Sequence record: KX397373.1
Strand: one strand, 5' to 3'
Length of the DNA stretch: 64,000 nt
Shown: in pieces, positions 2,576-24,998 of the stretch
Position numbering within the stretch: position 1 is the first letter of the stretch
Layout: each line of letters opens with the position of its first letter
Notes under the pieces: generated by a model
Databases searched by the model: none
What the model was told of the DNA's origin: nothing
The model's input: the letters and a program-made list of their open reading frames with translations, nothing else
Made by a program: the position numbers and the translations under genes

Positions 2576-3313
2576 ATGCTGCCAATCTATCCCAAGCCAT
2601 ATATGCCGACCATGCCCTCGATTGTTGTGGGGGCGGATGTTGAAACCCAATCCTTGCGTGACGATGCGTATATCATCGCCATGGGCCTTGTAGGCTTTGA
2701 TATCCCCACCATGAAAATGGTAGGGTCGTTCTACAAGACGATTGACCCGAAAGATCCAAAGGCGATGGAAATCTTTCACATCGACCCATCAACGTTAGGT
2801 TGGTGGGAAGGTAAAGACAACCCGGATTACGCCCCGACTGAGCAGGCCCGTATTGAAGCCTTCTCGGGTACGGAAAAAATCGACCAGGTATTGTGGGAAG
2901 CGAAAAAGTGGCTGGACACCATTTCGGCCAACCACGAAATCGTCATTACCATGCGCGGGCCGGAATTCGACAGCCCGAAAATCATGAACGCGTTCCAGCA
3001 GTGCGATGTGCCTGCGGGCAAGTTCCGGAAGTTCTCTATTCTGGATTCTGACCGTACCACTGAGCGACTGGCTCACGCGTTTGGCCTGGTGCCGAATCAC
3101 ACCGCAGAAGCCCATCACTGGACACGCGGTAAAGACGCCTACGAACACAATGCCGGTTTCGATGCAGCAAAAGAAGCGTACTGTACCGCTCGCATGTATC
3201 ACCTCGCGCTCGTGGCGAAAACTTACGGCTTCGAAAGAATGCTGGAATGCCACAACGAGATGTGCAGCGGCGAATACGTTGCTCCGCAGTTGAGAAACCA
3301 GTTACAAGCTTAA
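2576..3313 (+). CDS. DEDD/DnaQ-like 3'-5' exonuclease
   Basis: Exo motifs ADVET, GPEFDSP and HNAGFDA. Confidence 0.75.
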   Translation: MLPIYPKPYMPTMPSIVVGADVETQSLRDDAYIIAMGLVGFDIPTMKMVGSFYKTIDPKDPKAMEIFHIDPSTLGWWEGKDNPDYAPTEQARIEAFSGTEKIDQVLWEAKKWLDTISANHEIVITMRGPEFDSPKIMNAFQQCDVPAGKFRKFSILDSDRTTERLAHAFGLVPNHTAEAHHWTRGKDAYEHNAGFDAAKEAYCTARMYHLALVAKTYGFERMLECHNEMCSGEYVAPQLRNQLQA

Positions 3314-19021: not shown

Positions 19022-19450
19022 ATGATGAATAAGATTGCTTTTGAGAAAGGCACTGGCCTGATTGTTAATGAAGTCATTATCCCGAATACGGACAACGCTG
19101 CCTGGGAACACCTGGCGCTGCGTTTAAACGGTAAGAAGGTCTCTGTTACCTTAACCAACGAACTCGCACTCAACGGCAATCTGGCTAACGCTGGGCCGGA
19201 GTTTGCGGCGTTCAACGTACCCCATTCGACCGGCGTTTGTTTTTTGAAGAACGCGTACTTCGCAAGTCGAGTTTACAGCTGGAAACTACTGGCTGAACTG
19301 AACAAATCCGTTGGCCTGAACGCGAAGCAGGGTGTGCCGAACGACCACATTGCTAACCACGGTATCGTTATCGTGGTCTCTCGCGTTGCCGGTGAAGAAC
19401 TGGCCTTCTCTTTCTGTTACGCGTACGGAGCACAGGATGCAGCTGCCTAA
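19022..19450 (+). CDS. Hypothetical protein
   Basis: 142-aa ORF with AAGGA RBS. Confidence 0.7.
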   Translation: MMNKIAFEKGTGLIVNEVIIPNTDNAAWEHLALRLNGKKVSVTLTNELALNGNLANAGPEFAAFNVPHSTGVCFLKNAYFASRVYSWKLLAELNKSVGLNAKQGVPNDHIANHGIVIVVSRVAGEELAFSFCYAYGAQDAAA

Positions 19451-20348
19451 TGCCGAGATTCAAATCCACGCCGTAGACAGCTGGTATACCGACACAAAGG
19501 TGTACCAGTTCGGCAGCTACGAACAACAGCGTAGCAAACTGTATCGTTGCCTCGGTGAAATTGCCGAGGGGGTACAGAAAGACGATACCTTAAAAGTGGC
19601 AGCCGGTATCGGTCGGGTGCTGTGGACGTTCATCGGCCTTGTGCATTTCTCCAAGCAAGCTCACGATGTTCCCCTGCACAGCCAACTCGACCACTATATT
19701 CAGTTGAAGCTGAAAGCCACCAACAAACACGCCCAGCTTCATGCGCTGATGCACAACACCCTGGATCTGGTCTGGCAGACACCCGAAGACGGTGACTTCT
19801 GTTTGCACAGTTTCCTGAAAGCGTTTGGTGATTTCATGATGGGACTGAATACGTTGTGTAAAGCCACAGGGCTAGAGTTTGACCGGGTGGTGTACAACGG
19901 CCATTACGCACTCATTCGCACTCAGGGTGAGATGAACGAGCTGGGGATGTTTATTCCTGCGCCAGGCGATCTGGATGGTGATGTAATGGGCCAACCTCTG
20001 GTTAATGAGAAACTTCCTTCTGGTCAGCTCACCCACTTTTATATCGAAAGTGGGCTGAACGCCGCGGCTGCTAAAGCGTTCGTGCCGTACGTTCACACCC
20101 CGTTTGCTTCTCACAAGGTCGATGAGGTCAGTGATAAACTGGCGGAGGCATTGGAAGAACTGTTGGAGCGGCACATCTACAGTGATGATAAATGGCGACA
20201 TCTGACTTTCGAGCGGACGCCAAAGATTAACATCATGTACGAAAACGGCACCGTGACAGCCACGTACAACGATGACCTCAAGTTTATCATGAATACCCTA
20301 AAACAGGATAATTTGCACCATGAAACAATATCTGGACTTACTGCGTGA
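19437..20348 (+). CDS. Degenerate MazG-like protein (metal-binding acidic residues lost)
   Basis: Gapless ~63-aa alignment to the MazG core of 22754..23659, with EEDGE replaced by RCLGE and DGLGD by AGIGR; distal [10 protein letters not shown] matches GLLNADGIFI. Confidence 0.7.
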
Positions 20349-21237
20349 CGTTCGTGACAACGGGCACGAAAAAGCAGACCGTACGGGCACGGGCACCCTG
20401 TCGTTATTCGGCGCACAAATGCGCTTTGACCTGCAAAAAGGTTTCCCGCTGGTCACGACCAAAAAGGTTCACCTCCGCTCCATCATCCATGAGCTTCTGT
20501 GGTTCCTCATGGGCGATACCAACATCCAGTATCTGAAAGACAACAACGTCAGTATCTGGGATGAATGGGCGGATGAAGATGGTAATCTCGGCCCGGTGTA
20601 TGGAATGCAGTGGCGGGCATGGATGGGACCGGGTTACGAAACCATTGACCAGATCAGCAAGGTCATGGATCAACTGAAAAATGACCCGGACAACCGCCGC
20701 ATTATCGTCAGCGCCTGGAATGTGGCAGAGCTGGACAAGATGGCATTAGCGCCATGCCATGCGTTCTTCCAGTTCTATACGCGTGAGCTGTCGCTGGCAG
20801 AGCGTATGCACGCCGTGCGTAATCACCCGGACTTCGGTAAACAGTGGTTAGAAGCTGACCTGCGTTTCTCTGAGAACGAAGCATGGCTGGACAAGCATAA
20901 CTTCCCAACGCGTGTTCTGTCCTGTCAGCTTTATCAAAGATCGGCGGACATGTTCCTGGGTGTCCCGTTCAACATCGCTTCCTACGCTTTACTGATGCAC
21001 ATGTTTGCACAGCAAGCGAATATGTTAGTGGGTGATTTTGTCTGGACGGGTGGGGACGTGCATCTGTACTCCAACCACCTGGAGCAGGCAGATTTGCAGT
21101 TAACTCGCGAACCTCATCCGTTACCACAACTGCGGATTAAACGTCGTCCGGATTCTATCTTCGACTATAAGTTTGAAGATTTCGAAGTGGTCGGATACGA
21201 ATCGCATGACGCTATTAAGGCACCGGTGGCGATATGA
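20320..21237 (+). CDS. thyA: Thymidylate synthase
   Basis: [47 protein letters not shown]; very close to enterobacterial ThyA. Confidence 0.97.
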
Positions 21238-22031
21238 AGAACAAGCTCTTTGTTTTCTCGGATGCCTTTTACACCACCAACTACGATCAGTACAACCACG
21301 GCGTTGTTGCCGCGATTAATGAAGAAGATGCCCAGCGCTTAGTACCGACGGGTATCGATTTGATCGAAGTCGGTGAGACCGATGCGTATGACGTGTTGCT
21401 GTTTGCGGAAGGTGTACGTAACTGGCCTGAGCGCCACCGTTACACCAACCACACCATCAACTGTCCTGGCTGGAAAGTCATTGAAGGGGCAGATATCTCG
21501 GACTACGAGAAGAAGCTTGTGGAGTTAATGCAACTCCCACCGGACATGGACATCGTGTTCAGTAACTGGGGGAAGGTGCCAGAAGACAGTGAGCACGGTA
21601 AACCGCCTGCGGCTGGGCAATGGACAATAACCGCAACCTCTGGTGAACTCGGGGGCTCTGCACAAGTTCACTTTAACGGCTTGCCTTCTCTGGACGCTCT
21701 GCTTGAGCCTGCGGAACACACGGTCAGTTATACCTGGCAGGATACCGAAACCTTGCCGGTGACGATTGAGCATGTTCTGGCAGACGTGTTGAAGGTGGTG
21801 GGGCGAGAGTCTGAGTACCACGACTGGGCAGGAATGGCACGACAGCACTTCTATTCAGAAACGGCAGTGCTCGGTTGGGAAGAACTGACTGAGGAAATCG
21901 GTCAGTACAAGAAAACATGGTACCGTCACCCGGACTGGCAAACGCTGGTTCCAGAGATGGTGCGTAAAGAAGCCTCCAAACTCACCGTTATCACTGATGA
22001 AAACGGCAGAATGCGGATGGCGCAATACTAA
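21234..22031 (+). CDS. Hypothetical protein
   Basis: 265 aa, ATGA overlap; N-terminal module shared with 23687..24514. Confidence 0.75.
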
Positions 22032-22047: not shown

Positions 22048-22527
22048 GTGTCTATGACTCCAATTAACTATAACTTGGTAGTGAAAGAACTTTCGAACGG
22101 TCTGGTTGCATTGGACAGTGACGAAGCCCAGAGCTTGGTGTTGCTCCCGCATGTAGAGCTGAGCGAATTCCGTACTATCCGCTACGGTGCTGGCCGTCAG
22201 AAAGGGGTGACTGAACACGCCATCAACATGGCTGCGCACCACAAAGGGTCGGTGCTTATCCTTGTCCATCATGAAGCGTTACGCAATGAAGCGATGCGTA
22301 AGTTCCATGCGAAGGCGTCGGGTGATGGGTGGTTAACTGTGCATTGCAGTTACCTGCCTGAGAACTGGAAACAGGCTACCGGCTCTGGACTCTCTGGTTA
22401 TGAGAAGTTCAGTCTGGCCATAGTCGATGAAGCCGGGTTCTTCTTCAACAAATTTAGCTTTGACAAAATCTACCGCAGTCTGGTCGATGTTGTGACGCCG
22501 GACGTGGTTATCCATCTCATCAATTAA
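22048..22527 (+). CDS. Small degenerate P-loop NTPase-like protein
   Basis: GRQKGVT (compare GRQxGKT) and AIVDEAG (Walker B-like); GAGG RBS before GTG 22048. Confidence 0.5.
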   Translation: MSMTPINYNLVVKELSNGLVALDSDEAQSLVLLPHVELSEFRTIRYGAGRQKGVTEHAINMAAHHKGSVLILVHHEALRNEAMRKFHAKASGDGWLTVHCSYLPENWKQATGSGLSGYEKFSLAIVDEAGFFFNKFSFDKIYRSLVDVVTPDVVIHLIN

Positions 22528-22538
22528 GAGAATACGCA

Positions 22539-22694
22539 ATGAGCAATAAAGAGCAGGTACAGGAATCACAGCTGGCAGCTGACCCAATGGACTTTGGTGA
22601 CATCCCAGGTCTTGACCCGGATGCCGGTGTTGTCGGTGGTGTTGATGCAGCTATCGAAGACGATGGTTGTGCTGGCGGTGCCTGCAAAATTTAA
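22539..22694 (+). CDS. 51-aa acidic peptide ending in an NrdA-like redox tail (DDGCAGGACKI)
   Basis: Hand translation: MSNKEQVQESQLAADPMDFGDIPGLDPDAGVVGGVDAAIEDDGCAGGACKI*. It fills the intergenic gap and is followed by a terminator; below the ORF-track length cutoff. Confidence 0.8.
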   Translation: MSNKEQVQESQLAADPMDFGDIPGLDPDAGVVGGVDAAIEDDGCAGGACKI

Positions 22695-22700
22695 CAAATA

Positions 22701-22734
22701 GGTGTGTCCATATGGACACACCACTTTATTTTTT
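22701..22734 (+). terminator. Intrinsic terminator after the peptide gene
   Basis: Perfect GGTGTGTCCA/TGGACACACC inverted repeat followed by ACTTTATTTTTT. Confidence 0.8.
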
Positions 22735-22753: not shown

Positions 22754-23659
22754 ATGGGCGATCGTTTTGTTATTCAGATTCCGTACAACGTTATTGTAAA
22801 CCCGAATGCGTATTTAGAGCAGATTAACACCCTGCTGGCAGGCTTCTGTCATCGCCAGCACGCGACCCCGTGGTCGTTTGAAGCGCTGTACTCACTGAGC
22901 GTTAACAGTGAGACCGGCAGTACCCGCGTTGAAGGGAAGGCGAAAACCGAAGACGGTCGTCTGGAAATCAACGATTTCGAAATGCCGTGGCAACTGAAAG
23001 ATGTTGAGTTCAACGGCAAAGTTAACCATCCGCGTTATATCCCACTCTTCTCTGTTGGCCAGTGTATTGACAATGTACTGGGCTGGTCTGCTGCGCGTGG
23101 TATTCTGGAAAACGGCAAATGGGACACCCAGGTGACCAAGCTGTATGAAGAAGACGGTGAAGCGGCGACCGGTATCAGCAAATCGAAAGAGCGCCTTATC
23201 ATGGACGGTCTGGGTGATGCTCTGGTGGTGCTGGTTAACGTGATGGAACTGTCGGGTATCGGTGCAGGTAAATTACGCGAGTGTTTTGTTGACGCCACGC
23301 TGGCACGCAACAACAGCAACAACAAAGTCAATAGCTACGGCCCACACCGCCTGTTCCACTGGATGCGTATGTGTCTGACTATCGGTAATCAGGTGCTGTA
23401 CACTGCGTACGATACCTACCTCGAGAACGACGAGAACCGTGGTAAGAAGTTCTCTATTGAGCTGGGTGAAACCAACGCTTCCCGTCACGCCGAATCATTC
23501 ATTGGTCACGCCACCCATGCGGTGCACGCGATGTTGCTGCTCGCCGATCACTACAACATGCCTATCGAACATTGCTTCTCCCTGGCGTGGGATGAAATCA
23601 AAGACCGTAAAGGGCTCTTGAACGCCGACGGCATCTTCATTAAAGAAGCTGACGCCTAA
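22754..23659 (+). CDS. mazG: MazG-like NTP pyrophosphohydrolase with extra N-terminal domain
   Basis: KLYEEDGE, DGLGDALVVL, CFSLAWDEIKDRKG...GIFIKE; AAGGA RBS before ATG 22754. Confidence 0.85.
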   Translation: MGDRFVIQIPYNVIVNPNAYLEQINTLLAGFCHRQHATPWSFEALYSLSVNSETGSTRVEGKAKTEDGRLEINDFEMPWQLKDVEFNGKVNHPRYIPLFSVGQCIDNVLGWSAARGILENGKWDTQVTKLYEEDGEAATGISKSKERLIMDGLGDALVVLVNVMELSGIGAGKLRECFVDATLARNNSNNKVNSYGPHRLFHWMRMCLTIGNQVLYTAYDTYLENDENRGKKFSIELGETNASRHAESFIGHATHAVHAMLLLADHYNMPIEHCFSLAWDEIKDRKGLLNADGIFIKEADA

Positions 23660-24963: not shown

Positions 24964-24998
24964 CGAGTAGCCCATTGGGCTACTCGCTTTCTTTTTTT
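24964..24998. terminator. Terminator between convergent units
   Basis: CGAGTAGCCC-ATT-GGGCTACTCG with T-tract on the right and A-tract on the left. Confidence 0.8.

What the first reader, a model, noticed from the sequence alone, without database searches (positions are those of the whole stretch)
22539..22694. Unannotated 51-aa gene encoding a free-standing mimic of the ribonucleotide reductase (NrdA) redox tail
Seen: ORF MSNKEQVQESQLAADPMDFGDIPGLDPDAGVVGGVDAAIEDDGCAGGACKI*, with the same TAAGAGAAT upstream context as the RNase H gene and a terminator right after it. Known: E. coli NrdA ends in DDGCESGACKI, whose Cys754/Cys759 pair carries electrons from thioredoxin/glutaredoxin to the active-site disulfide on a flexible acidic tail. 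The peptide matches 9 of the last 11 residues, including CxxxxC and the terminal KI. The rest is an acidic Gly/Pro linker with no NrdA catalytic sequence (no LYY motif), so it does not look like a gene remnant. No nrdA is in this window. Inference: it could be a trans-acting shuttle that speeds re-reduction of host RNR, a decoy or inhibitor of Trx/Grx or the RNR active site, or the detached tail of a split phage RNR. It sits among thyA and mazG genes.
Basis: partly seen in the sequence, partly recalled or inferred. Interest (0 to 1): 0.88.

Follow-up and report, generated by a model that had tools for sequence, protein, structure and literature searches.

The report
Free-standing copy of RNR's redox tail
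A 51-residue giant-phage protein ends in an exact copy of the flexible two-cysteine tail that recharges ribonucleotide reductase (the enzyme that makes DNA precursors), and it belongs to a large, undescribed family found in many phages and some bacteria, which suggests an unknown way of acting on that enzyme from outside.

Summary
The ORF is real (window 22539-22694, +), but it is not unannotated. It is STRATTON_255 (gp255, "hypothetical protein") of Erwinia jumbo phage vB_EamM_Stratton. Its last 12 residues are identical to the C-terminal end of class Ia NrdA from N. gonorrhoeae (PDB 7MDI), Rheinheimera, Methylophilus and others, and 9 of 12 match E. coli. Identity falls to background immediately upstream.

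It is neither a remnant nor a split RNR. The complete Stratton and SPN3US genomes encode no RNR alpha or beta. The ORF is under purifying selection (dN/dS 0.2).

It belongs to a family of at least 129 short, very acidic proteins (76 clusters at 50% identity). Of the 120 listed, 116 keep both cysteines and the same ending. Members occur in at least five jumbo-phage genera, other phages, and Neisseria and Moraxella chromosomes. In phages the gene sits in deoxynucleotide-metabolism clusters. Twice the module is fused to a deoxyribonucleotidase or a MazG-like enzyme. The peptide is predicted to be disordered. No Pfam or NCBIfam model and no paper describes it.

Best reading (about 0.4): a tail acting in trans on the host class Ia RNR and thioredoxin/glutaredoxin relay, most likely as an extra electron shuttle. 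An inhibitor or decoy role and a docking-tag role remain open. Function is untested.

The parts
22525..22533 (+). Purine-rich nonamer upstream of the start. It overlaps the gp254 stop codon and is a likely Shine-Dalgarno-like context. The same nonamer precedes the RNase H gene at 3311.
   Evidence: 2 copies in the window, 0.21 expected by chance (weak)
22539..22694 (+). CDS gp255 (STRATTON_255), 51 aa plus stop. It has 11 acidic and 2 basic residues and 2 Cys, and is predicted to be disordered.
   Evidence: phrog_14561, E 6e-31; dN/dS 0.2; pLDDT 59, no secondary structure
22539..22580 (+). Variable N-terminal segment (codons 1-14). Its length and sequence differ between relatives, whose total length ranges from 36 to 120 aa.
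22581..22646 (+). Second conserved block (residues 15-36), acidic and hydrophobic, ending in the G-G-V-D stretch. It is absent from NrdA. D26, G34 and D36 are invariant in the 15-sequence alignment.
22656..22691 (+). NrdA-tail copy (residues 40-51) with the two Cys spaced by four residues and the terminal Lys-Ile. C44, G47, A48, C49 and K50 are invariant.
22701..22734 (+). Intrinsic-terminator-like hairpin (22701-22722; 9 pairs, 6 of them G-C) plus a T-run. It closes the gp253-gp254-gp255 transcription unit.
22048..22527 (+). gp254, the immediate upstream gene. It is syntenic in Erskine-, Machina-, Seoul- and Alexandravirus. It has a weak RecA-like (SF2 helicase domain 1 / RadD-like) fold and is not a redoxin.
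   Evidence: best E 3.4e-4, TM 0.46-0.5; model pLDDT 65
21234..22031 (+). gp253, a syntenic upstream gene of unknown function (phrog_10453).
20320..21237 (+). Thymidylate synthase ThyA (gp252).
   Evidence: PF00303, E 1e-119
22754..23659 (+). MazG-like nucleotide pyrophosphohydrolase (gp256), immediately downstream.
   Evidence: phrog_7855, E 2e-128

Best explanation
gp255 is a free-standing, intrinsically disordered surrogate of the C-terminal redox tail of class Ia ribonucleotide reductase alpha (NrdA). It is made by a phage that has no RNR of its own.

Proposed mechanism (inferred):
1. The last 12 residues, with two cysteines spaced by four residues and a terminal Lys-Ile, are recognised by the same partners as the host enzyme's own tail.
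2. Host thioredoxin or glutaredoxin reduces the peptide's disulfide.
3. The dithiol end then enters the NrdA active-site pocket and re-reduces the catalytic disulfide.
4. The conserved acidic and hydrophobic block upstream (residues 15-36) supplies docking that replaces the covalent tether.
5. The net effect is an extra electron conduit for the re-reduction half-cycle of the host enzyme, which raises deoxynucleotide supply for a 244-kb genome.

Shown: the sequence identity with the tail, its sharp boundary, conservation of both Cys, predicted disorder, absence of a phage RNR, and the nucleotide-metabolism context.

Inferred: every binding and electron-transfer step, and the direction of the effect.
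For: 1. Tail identity. The last 12 residues are identical to many NrdA C-termini, and both proteins end at the same residue. The only PDB hit is NrdA 7mdi_A.

2. The C-x4-C type is a minority tail type characteristic of E. coli-like class Ia enzymes (PMC9669993). The phage hosts (Enterobacterales) and Neisseria have exactly this type.

3. Both Cys, their spacing and the G-A-C-K end are kept in 116 of 120 family members. Different synonymous codons encode them in different genera. dN/dS is 0.2, with 0 non-synonymous and 2 synonymous changes in the tail. Strict retention of both Cys is what redox chemistry would need, and more than a passive plug would need.

4. Complete Stratton and SPN3US genomes lack RNR alpha and beta, whereas phiKZ has them. 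These phages therefore depend on the host enzyme (PMC12571901).

5. The gene lies in dNTP-synthesis clusters in unrelated phages: thyA, dCMP deaminase, dNMP kinase, ThyX, dUTPase, MazG.

6. It is predicted to be disordered, like the natural tail.

7. Published background: the alpha tail shuttles between thioredoxin and the active site, and it competes with substrate for the same pocket (PMC11903788).

8. From my own knowledge, not checked here: re-reduction limits steady-state turnover of the E. coli enzyme, and an isolated NrdA C-terminal peptide is a glutaredoxin substrate.
Against: - There is no experimental evidence of any interaction. No expression data were found.
- A peptide in trans must compete with a tethered tail of high local concentration, so a net gain is not obvious.
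- Mimicry is imperfect in a verified phage-host pair: E. coli phage EC001 versus E. coli NrdA share 8 of the last 11 residues.
- Phages infecting the same Erwinia host carry five different variants at the two residues after the first Cys.
- The two fusions are to catabolic enzymes (a deoxyribonucleotidase and a MazG-like enzyme), which fits a docking or pool-lowering role at least as well.
- The docking role of the upstream block is pure inference. It resembles neither NrdB tails nor a significant amphipathic helix.
- Bacterial copies have no constant redox partner gene. The Moraxella thioredoxin-family neighbour is probably a separate transcript.
Confidence: 0.4

Rival explanations
1. Competitive inhibitor or decoy, a throttle with Sml1-like logic. 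The free tail occupies the NrdA active-site pocket, or titrates thioredoxin/glutaredoxin, in competition with the enzyme's own tail. This slows re-reduction and lowers host dNTP synthesis. Possible purposes are shutting off host replication, excluding competitors, or regulating RNR in bacteria.
For: - Tail and substrate binding are mutually exclusive in the active site (PMC11903788), so a bound free tail would block substrate.
- The precedent of a small disordered protein interfering with the R1 C-terminus is yeast Sml1 (Zhang et al. 2007, pmid 17277086, seen only as a reference in PMC4078304).
- The two fusions are to enzymes that lower deoxynucleotide pools (5'-3' deoxyribonucleotidase and a MazG-like pyrophosphohydrolase), and one bacterial copy is adjacent to a YfbR-like deoxynucleotidase. 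This gives a coherent pool-lowering theme.
- Molecular mimics made by phages are usually inhibitors (general knowledge).
Against: - Stratton and SPN3US have no RNR of their own, so inhibiting the host enzyme would starve their own replication unless host-DNA recycling suffices.
- A passive plug would not need both Cys and their spacing conserved in 116 of 120 members.
- The phage neighbours are mostly biosynthetic: ThyA, ThyX, dNMP kinase, dCMP deaminase.
Confidence: 0.25
2. Portable docking tag or adaptor. The roughly 40-residue module (acidic block plus tail) is a targeting device that binds NrdA or a redoxin. It brings cargo, either fused enzymes or proteins bound by the variable N-terminus, to the site of deoxynucleotide synthesis, as in a dNTP-synthetase-type complex.
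For: - The whole module, not only the tail, is appended to the C-terminus of two enzymes with unrelated folds: a HAD-type deoxyribonucleotidase (P0137, identical sequence on 5 contigs) and a MazG-like pyrophosphohydrolase (P0145).
- In Stratton and relatives the free gene lies next to or near mazG.
- N-terminal extensions vary from about 0 to 70 residues between relatives.
Against: - Most members are only 40-50 aa with nothing to deliver.
- The MazG fusion rests on one 1.2-kb contig.
- Only 2 of 76 clusters are fusions.
- A pure binding tag would not need both Cys.
Confidence: 0.15
3. The function is unrelated to RNR. The Cys pair could serve another purpose: metal binding, a redox switch acting on the neighbouring MazG-type enzyme, or a ribosomally made peptide precursor modified by radical-SAM enzymes. 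The likeness to the NrdA end would then be convergent.
For: - The single-sequence match to NrdA is short (E 0.49 against PDB).
- Stratton and SPN3US both carry a pair of radical-SAM genes.
- Acidic small Cys-containing peptides are typical precursor peptides (general knowledge).
- The Neisseria copy follows a Cys-rich DUF3079 protein.
Against: - Twelve consecutive identical residues ending at the same C-terminus, with a specific minority tail type, are far beyond chance.
- All 20 verified bacterial occurrences of the tail pattern in 185,579 genomes are NrdA ends.
- The radical-SAM genes are about 60 kb away, and none is adjacent in any of the 9 other contexts sampled.
- There is no NCBIfam or Pfam precursor-peptide hit.
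Confidence: 0.12
4. Remnant or detached exon of a phage nrdA: a decaying gene or a split RNR.
For: - Some viral contigs encode full NrdA with the identical end (L031/L032, L039). Others encode only a 341-342-aa C-terminal part (L037, L043, L044).
- Split class II RNRs exist (PMC9669993).
Against: - There is no RNR body anywhere in Stratton or SPN3US.
- Likeness stops abruptly 12 residues from the end.
- A second conserved block is foreign to NrdA.
- The ORF is under purifying selection.
- No full-length NrdA matches the family profile at E<=1e-3 among 1.84 billion representatives.
- The family co-exists with intact NrdA in Neisseria.
Confidence: 0.03

Closest known systems
C-terminal redox tail of class Ia RNR alpha (NrdA; E. 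coli Cys754/Cys759 type)
   Same: The last 12 residues are identical to many NrdA ends (9 of 12 for E. coli). The Cys-x4-Cys spacing is the same, the terminal Lys-Ile is the same, and both are disordered and acidic.
   Different: The peptide is not attached to any catalytic barrel. The 25-30 residues upstream are unrelated to NrdA and carry their own conserved block. It is encoded as a separate gene in genomes without RNR.
Sml1 / Spd1 / Hug1 / Dif1 (small disordered RNR regulators of yeasts)
   Same: These are small, disordered, free-standing proteins that act on the large subunit. Sml1 is reported to interfere with the R1 C-terminal tail's regeneration role (reference seen).
   Different: No sequence relationship was found (no Pfam hit). 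Those proteins do not copy the tail and have no conserved Cys pair. They are eukaryotic only, and they are inhibitors, whereas the direction of effect here is unknown.
Dedicated RNR redoxins (NrdH; phage T4 NrdC thioredoxin)
   Same: They are small accessory proteins, also phage-encoded, that feed electrons to RNR through the tail (general knowledge).
   Different: Those are folded thioredoxin-fold proteins with CxxC. gp255 has no fold, no redoxin domain, and mimics the substrate side of the exchange.
Split RNRs (for example NrdJa/NrdJb)
   Same: Part of an RNR polypeptide is encoded as a separate gene (PMC9669993).
   Different: In split RNRs the other half is present in the same genome. Here there is no catalytic half at all.
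PHROG families 14561, 24014, 38753 (unknown function)
   Same: gp255 is a member (E 6e-31, 7e-14, 3e-12).
   Different: These are unannotated clusters of phage proteins only. Neither the link to the NrdA tail, nor the bacterial members, nor the fusions are recorded there.

Membership tests
Class I RNR alpha subunit (NrdA), whole or split | Ribonucleotide reductase barrel domain (PF02867) with catalytic cysteines | tested here: not met
   There is no Pfam hit for the 51-aa protein. There is no NrdA body anywhere in the Stratton or SPN3US genomes by tblastn with five NrdA queries. No RNR domain occurs in the 20 largest unassigned Stratton proteins.
Class I RNR alpha subunit (NrdA), whole or split | C-terminal Cys pair on a disordered tail (C-x4-C in the E. 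coli type) | tested here: met
   The end is identical to NrdA ends. It is predicted to be disordered.
Free-standing NrdA-tail-like peptides (PHROG 14561/24014/38753 plus bacterial relatives) | Full-length match to the family profile | tested here: met
   phrog_14561 gives E 6e-31 over residues 1-51. The peptide is a member of alignments A2 and A5.
Free-standing NrdA-tail-like peptides (PHROG 14561/24014/38753 plus bacterial relatives) | Short protein ending in two Cys spaced by four residues, then Lys and Ile or Leu; a strongly acidic body; a conserved Gly-Gly-[Val/Phe]-Asp stretch about 16-19 residues from the end | tested here: met
   116 of 120 members share the ending. Column shares are Cys 100%, Gly -5 100%, Ala -4 100%, Lys -2 100%, Ile -1 93%, and Gly -19/-18 77-82%. 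The family median is 51 aa with net charge -11.
Sml1-type RNR inhibitors | Sequence membership in the Sml1 family | tested here: not met
   No Pfam or NCBIfam family is matched.
Sml1-type RNR inhibitors | Binds the large subunit and blocks tail-mediated regeneration | not testable with these tools
Thioredoxin-fold redoxins for RNR (NrdH, Grx, Trx) | Thioredoxin fold with a CxxC active site | tested here: not met
   There is no Pfam hit. The AlphaFold2 model has no secondary structure. The Cys spacing is four residues, not two.
Radical-SAM-modified peptide precursors (SCIFF/ranthipeptide-like) | Adjacent maturase gene and a recognised precursor family model | tested here: not met
   There is no NCBIfam or Pfam hit. 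The radical-SAM genes gp180/181 are about 60 kb away. None is adjacent in 9 other contexts.

The most novel reading that the evidence does not exclude
A widespread, so far undescribed class of RNR tails acting in trans. Bacteria such as Neisseria and Moraxella, and many phages, encode a roughly 40-residue portable module that plugs into the re-reduction step of class Ia RNR. RNR-less giant phages would use it to take control of, and probably accelerate, the host's dNTP factory with a 51-residue peptide instead of encoding their own reductase. Evolution has also bolted the same module onto dNTP-catabolic enzymes.
Probability: 0.35. Interest if true: 0.9.

Novelty: new variant of a known kind. 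Interest (0 to 1): 0.78.

Why it matters
RNR is the sole de novo source of DNA precursors and one of the most studied enzymes. Its C-terminal cysteine tail has always been regarded as an integral part of the large subunit. A conserved gene family that encodes the tail alone, in phages that lack RNR and in bacteria that have it, would add a new kind of accessory factor to a textbook pathway. It would also show how giant phages without their own reductase secure or manipulate nucleotide supply. The hypothesis is sharp and testable: the partners, residues and chemistry are all specified by the mimicry. The presence of the family in Neisseria and Moraxella makes it relevant to bacterial physiology as well. 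Finally, it gives a functional lead for three PHROG families that are currently of unknown function.

Tried and rejected
1. NrdB-tail idea. A profile of the upstream block found nothing in 21 nrdAB loci (20 bacterial plus E. coli), which include E. coli NrdB. Rejected.

2. Amphipathic-helix idea for that block. The hydrophobic moment is not above shuffles (median z 0.6), and the jumbo-phage subfamily is Pro/Gly-rich there. Rejected.

3. gp253 and gp254 as a conserved redox partner.
- gp254 has a weak RecA-like fold and is not a redoxin.
- gp253 is unidentified.
- Neither is detectably conserved next to the peptide in the metagenomic phage, and the Derbicusvirus neighbour is only 11-14% identical.

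4. Recent capture from host nrdA at the DNA level. There is no blastn similarity to any E. coli nrdA.

5. Pfam and NCBIfam give no family for the peptide or its bacterial relatives.

6. The Moraxella thioredoxin-family neighbour looked like an operon partner, but a terminator-like hairpin separates the two genes.

7. P0186 (375 aa, in the peptide's cluster) is a mis-clustered thiolase.

8. Literature. No paper holds the tail's letters, and no paper links SPN3US-like phages to RNR. The Thomas 2016 paper (PMC5105663) does not mention gp234. Zhang 2007 on Sml1 could not be read.

Bacterial free-standing copies were found only by the protein search.

10. I could not obtain the Erwinia amylovora NrdA tail. 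The verified host comparison is therefore E. coli phage EC001 versus E. coli.

11. RNR absence was tested on complete genomes for two genera only. Classes II and III were excluded only through annotation and Pfam scans of large ORFs.

I stopped doing so. The HAD and MazG readings were then tested with PHROGs.
Full report
WHAT THE WINDOW IS

The window is the last 64 kb of Erwinia phage vB_EamM_Stratton (KX397373.1; Erskinevirus; 243,953 bp). This is an SPN3US-like jumbo phage of Erwinia amylovora. The match is 100% identical, and window position equals record position minus 179,953.

THE OBSERVATION

- It is preceded by a purine-rich nonamer that overlaps the stop codon of the upstream gene. 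The same nonamer recurs once in the window, 5 nt before the RNase H start. The chance expectation is 0.21 copies and 2 of 100 shuffles reach two, so this is a weak signal.
- A strong terminator-like hairpin at 22701-22722 with a T-run follows the stop.
- The title word 'unannotated' is wrong. The ORF is STRATTON_255 (gp255), 'hypothetical protein'. Orthologues are annotated in phiEaH2 (100% identical), Asesino (82%), SPN3US (SPN3US_0234) and many others.

THE LIKENESS TO THE NrdA TAIL

I used no remembered sequence and let the peptide find its own relatives.

- Against all PDB chain sequences the only hit is an RNR alpha subunit, 7mdi_A. It matches at that chain's extreme C-terminus, with the last 11 residues identical. 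7MDI is the N. gonorrhoeae NrdA (PMC11226230).
- A pattern scan of 185,579 bacterial genomes gave 20 tblastn-confirmed loci. All are the ends of 756-803-aa ORFs (or of ORFs cut by contig ends). The two I scanned carry the Pfam RNR barrel, the all-alpha domain and the ATP-cone.
- Right-anchored identity is 12/12 (median) for the last 12 residues, then about 1/12 for the next 24, so the boundary is sharp. Most of those loci were retrieved with part of the tail as the pattern. E. coli, at 9/12, is the unbiased case.
- A profile of the family's last 45 residues hits all 21 bacterial NrdA ORFs in that test (20 loci plus E. coli), only at their last ~15-20 residues, at E 1e-6 to 5e-5 in that small ORF set.
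- According to PMC9669993, most class I RNRs end in CXXC. The CXXXXC type of E. coli is a minority, so this ending is diagnostic of one NrdA clade.

NOT A REMNANT, NOT A SPLIT RNR

- tblastn with E. coli NrdA, NrdB and YfaE, two further bacterial NrdA and two viral NrdA finds no RNR body in the complete Stratton genome. In each search the best NrdA match is gp255's own tail, C-end aligned to C-end.
- The complete SPN3US genome also has none.
- Neither annotation lists an RNR of any class.
- Pfam finds no RNR domain in the 20 largest unassigned Stratton proteins.
- phiKZ, by contrast, encodes an RNR (PMC12571901).
- The ORF is under purifying selection. dN/dS between Stratton and Asesino is 0.2, and the tail has 0 non-synonymous and 2 synonymous changes. 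Across genera the invariant tail residues use different synonymous codons.

THE FAMILY

- tblastn finds the peptide in 70 phage records from Erwinia, Salmonella, Cronobacter, Escherichia and Proteus phages.
- It matches three PHROGs of unknown function.
- A profile search of 5.8 billion proteins returned 129 short proteins at E<=0.01, of which 120 were listed. All 120 are free-standing: each starts with Met and none has NrdA body sequence. Of these, 116 end in the same way. The median is 51 aa, net charge -11 and two Cys.
- Column shares from the C-terminus are Ile 93%, Lys 100%, Cys 100%, Ala 100%, Gly 100%, Gly 92%, Ala 73% and Cys 100%. The three residues from -10 to -12 are Asp or Glu in 79-97% of members, and a Gly-Gly pair at -19/-18 is present in 77-82%.
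- The commonest observed 8-residue ending is the Stratton one (81 of 116). Eleven other variants differ only at the two residues after the first Cys and at the last residue.
- An exhaustive profile search of 1.84 billion representatives, with no length filter, gives 76 clusters at E<=1e-3. All are short apart from the two fusions described below and one low-complexity 506-aa protein (P0176) that matches weakly at the cut-off. No full-length NrdA appears.
- A few genuine variants have Cys-x2-Cys endings. From my general knowledge that resembles the commoner class I tail type, but I did not test it.
- AlphaFold2 with a 59-sequence alignment gives pLDDT 59, pTM 0.18 and no secondary structure, so the peptide is predicted to be disordered.

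CONTEXT IN PHAGES

- In five jumbo-phage genera the gene sits between thyA (or dCMP deaminase) and mazG. Usually it follows a ~250-290-aa gene and a ~150-175-aa gene.
- In an unrelated metagenomic phage it lies between a dCMP-deaminase-like gene, an RdgC-like gene and a 280-aa unknown on one side, and dNMP kinase, ThyX and dUTPase on the other. The upstream genes there are not detectably related to gp253 or gp254.
- It also occurs in an SU10-like phage.
- The feature that stays constant across phages is the deoxynucleotide-metabolism neighbourhood.
- gp254 models as a weak RecA-like domain and is not a redoxin.

CONTEXT IN BACTERIA

The family is also chromosomal.
- Neisseria: among housekeeping genes, after a Cys-rich DUF3079 gene.
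- Moraxella bovoculi: 70 bp upstream of a thioredoxin-family gene, but with a terminator-like hairpin in between.
- Unnamed bacterial contigs: beside a YfbR-like deoxynucleotidase, 2.3 kb from a TrxB-like reductase, 2.4 kb from nrdDG, or after a LysR regulator.

No partner gene is constant. The genus Neisseria thus has both an intact NrdA with this end (shown for N. gonorrhoeae) and a free-standing near-copy (found in other Neisseria species, including N. arctica).

FUSIONS

- P0137 is a 5'-3' deoxyribonucleotidase (phrog_2643, E 3e-15) with the whole module at its C-terminus. The identical sequence occurs on 5 contigs.
- P0145 is a MazG-like pyrophosphohydrolase (phrog_671, E 2e-30) with the module at its C-terminus. 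It is known from one 1.2-kb contig.

MECHANISM

Shown:
- an exact, end-anchored copy of a specific NrdA tail type;
- strict conservation of both Cys and of their spacing;
- predicted disorder;
- absence of a phage RNR in two complete genomes;
- a nucleotide-metabolism context, and fusions to nucleotide enzymes.

Published background: the alpha tail moves between thioredoxin and the active site, and it competes with substrate for the pocket (PMC11903788).

Inferred: the peptide engages the same partners in trans.

I favour an extra electron shuttle for the host enzyme (0.4), for three reasons. These phages depend on host RNR. Both Cys are conserved as redox chemistry would require. And, from my own knowledge, re-reduction limits steady-state turnover of the E. 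coli enzyme.

Other readings:
- A competitive inhibitor or decoy with Sml1-like logic is the main rival (0.25). It gains from the catabolic fusion partners.
- A portable docking tag is third (0.15).
- A function unrelated to RNR is at 0.12.
- A remnant or split RNR is at 0.03.

Mimicry is imperfect in a verified phage-host pair, with 8 of the last 11 residues shared. Erwinia phages carry five variants at the two residues after the first Cys. Only the invariant positions can therefore be essential.

COMPARISON WITH KNOWN SYSTEMS AND NOVELTY

- It works like the NrdA tail but is not an NrdA, because it has no barrel.
- It resembles Sml1-type regulators only in being small and disordered.
- It is not a redoxin.
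- It is not a split RNR, because there is no partner half.
- No Pfam or NCBIfam model exists, and no paper I could find describes it.

I rate it a new variant of a known kind: the known cysteine-tail relay, detached into its own gene and made portable.

LIMITS

- There is no expression or interaction evidence.
- RNR absence was tested on complete genomes for two genera only.
- The Erwinia NrdA tail was not obtained.
- Structure prediction of complexes was not available.

SLIP

Noticed in passing
KX397373.1 12195-14480 (L004:12195-14480), outside the window: STRATTON gp33, annotated as hypothetical, is a divergent family B DNA polymerase (PF20286, E 4e-283).
   Followed up: partly
window 19437-20348 (+): gp251 (phrog_10269) has weak MazG-like similarity (E 4.5e-8 to phrog_7855). 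Two MazG-like genes therefore bracket the thyA-gp255 cluster.
   Followed up: no
KX397373.1 140393-142634 (L006:40393-42634, minus strand); SPN3US gp102/gp103: A conserved pair of radical-SAM proteins with a Fer4_12 domain (446 and 300 aa). No NrdD-like partner or adjacent substrate gene was found, and their role is unknown.
   Followed up: partly
L083 (NZ_CP173450.1 187739-194795): A 221,873-bp circular 'plasmid' of a clinical E. coli isolate shows jumbo-phage synteny (thyA ... 47-aa family member). It is probably a jumbo-phage genome deposited as a plasmid.
   Followed up: partly
L037, L043, L044 (viral contigs): ORFs of 341-342 aa correspond only to the C-terminal part of NrdA, including the same tail. 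They are possibly split or interrupted phage nrdA genes.
   Followed up: no
window 22048-22527 (+): gp254 has an invariant Asp-Glu after a hydrophobic strand and a Gly-rich loop. It models as a lone RecA-like domain (best PDB matches are RadD and DEAD-box domain 1; E 3e-4, TM about 0.5; pLDDT 65). Its function is unknown.
   Followed up: partly
L055:5585-5869 (Neisseria chromosome): The DUF3079 protein just upstream of the Neisseria family member is small and Cys-rich, with several closely spaced Cys pairs. The same pairing occurs on three contigs.
   Followed up: no
window 24964-24986: A second strong, bidirectional terminator-like hairpin lies between the convergent genes gp258 and gp259.
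   Followed up: no
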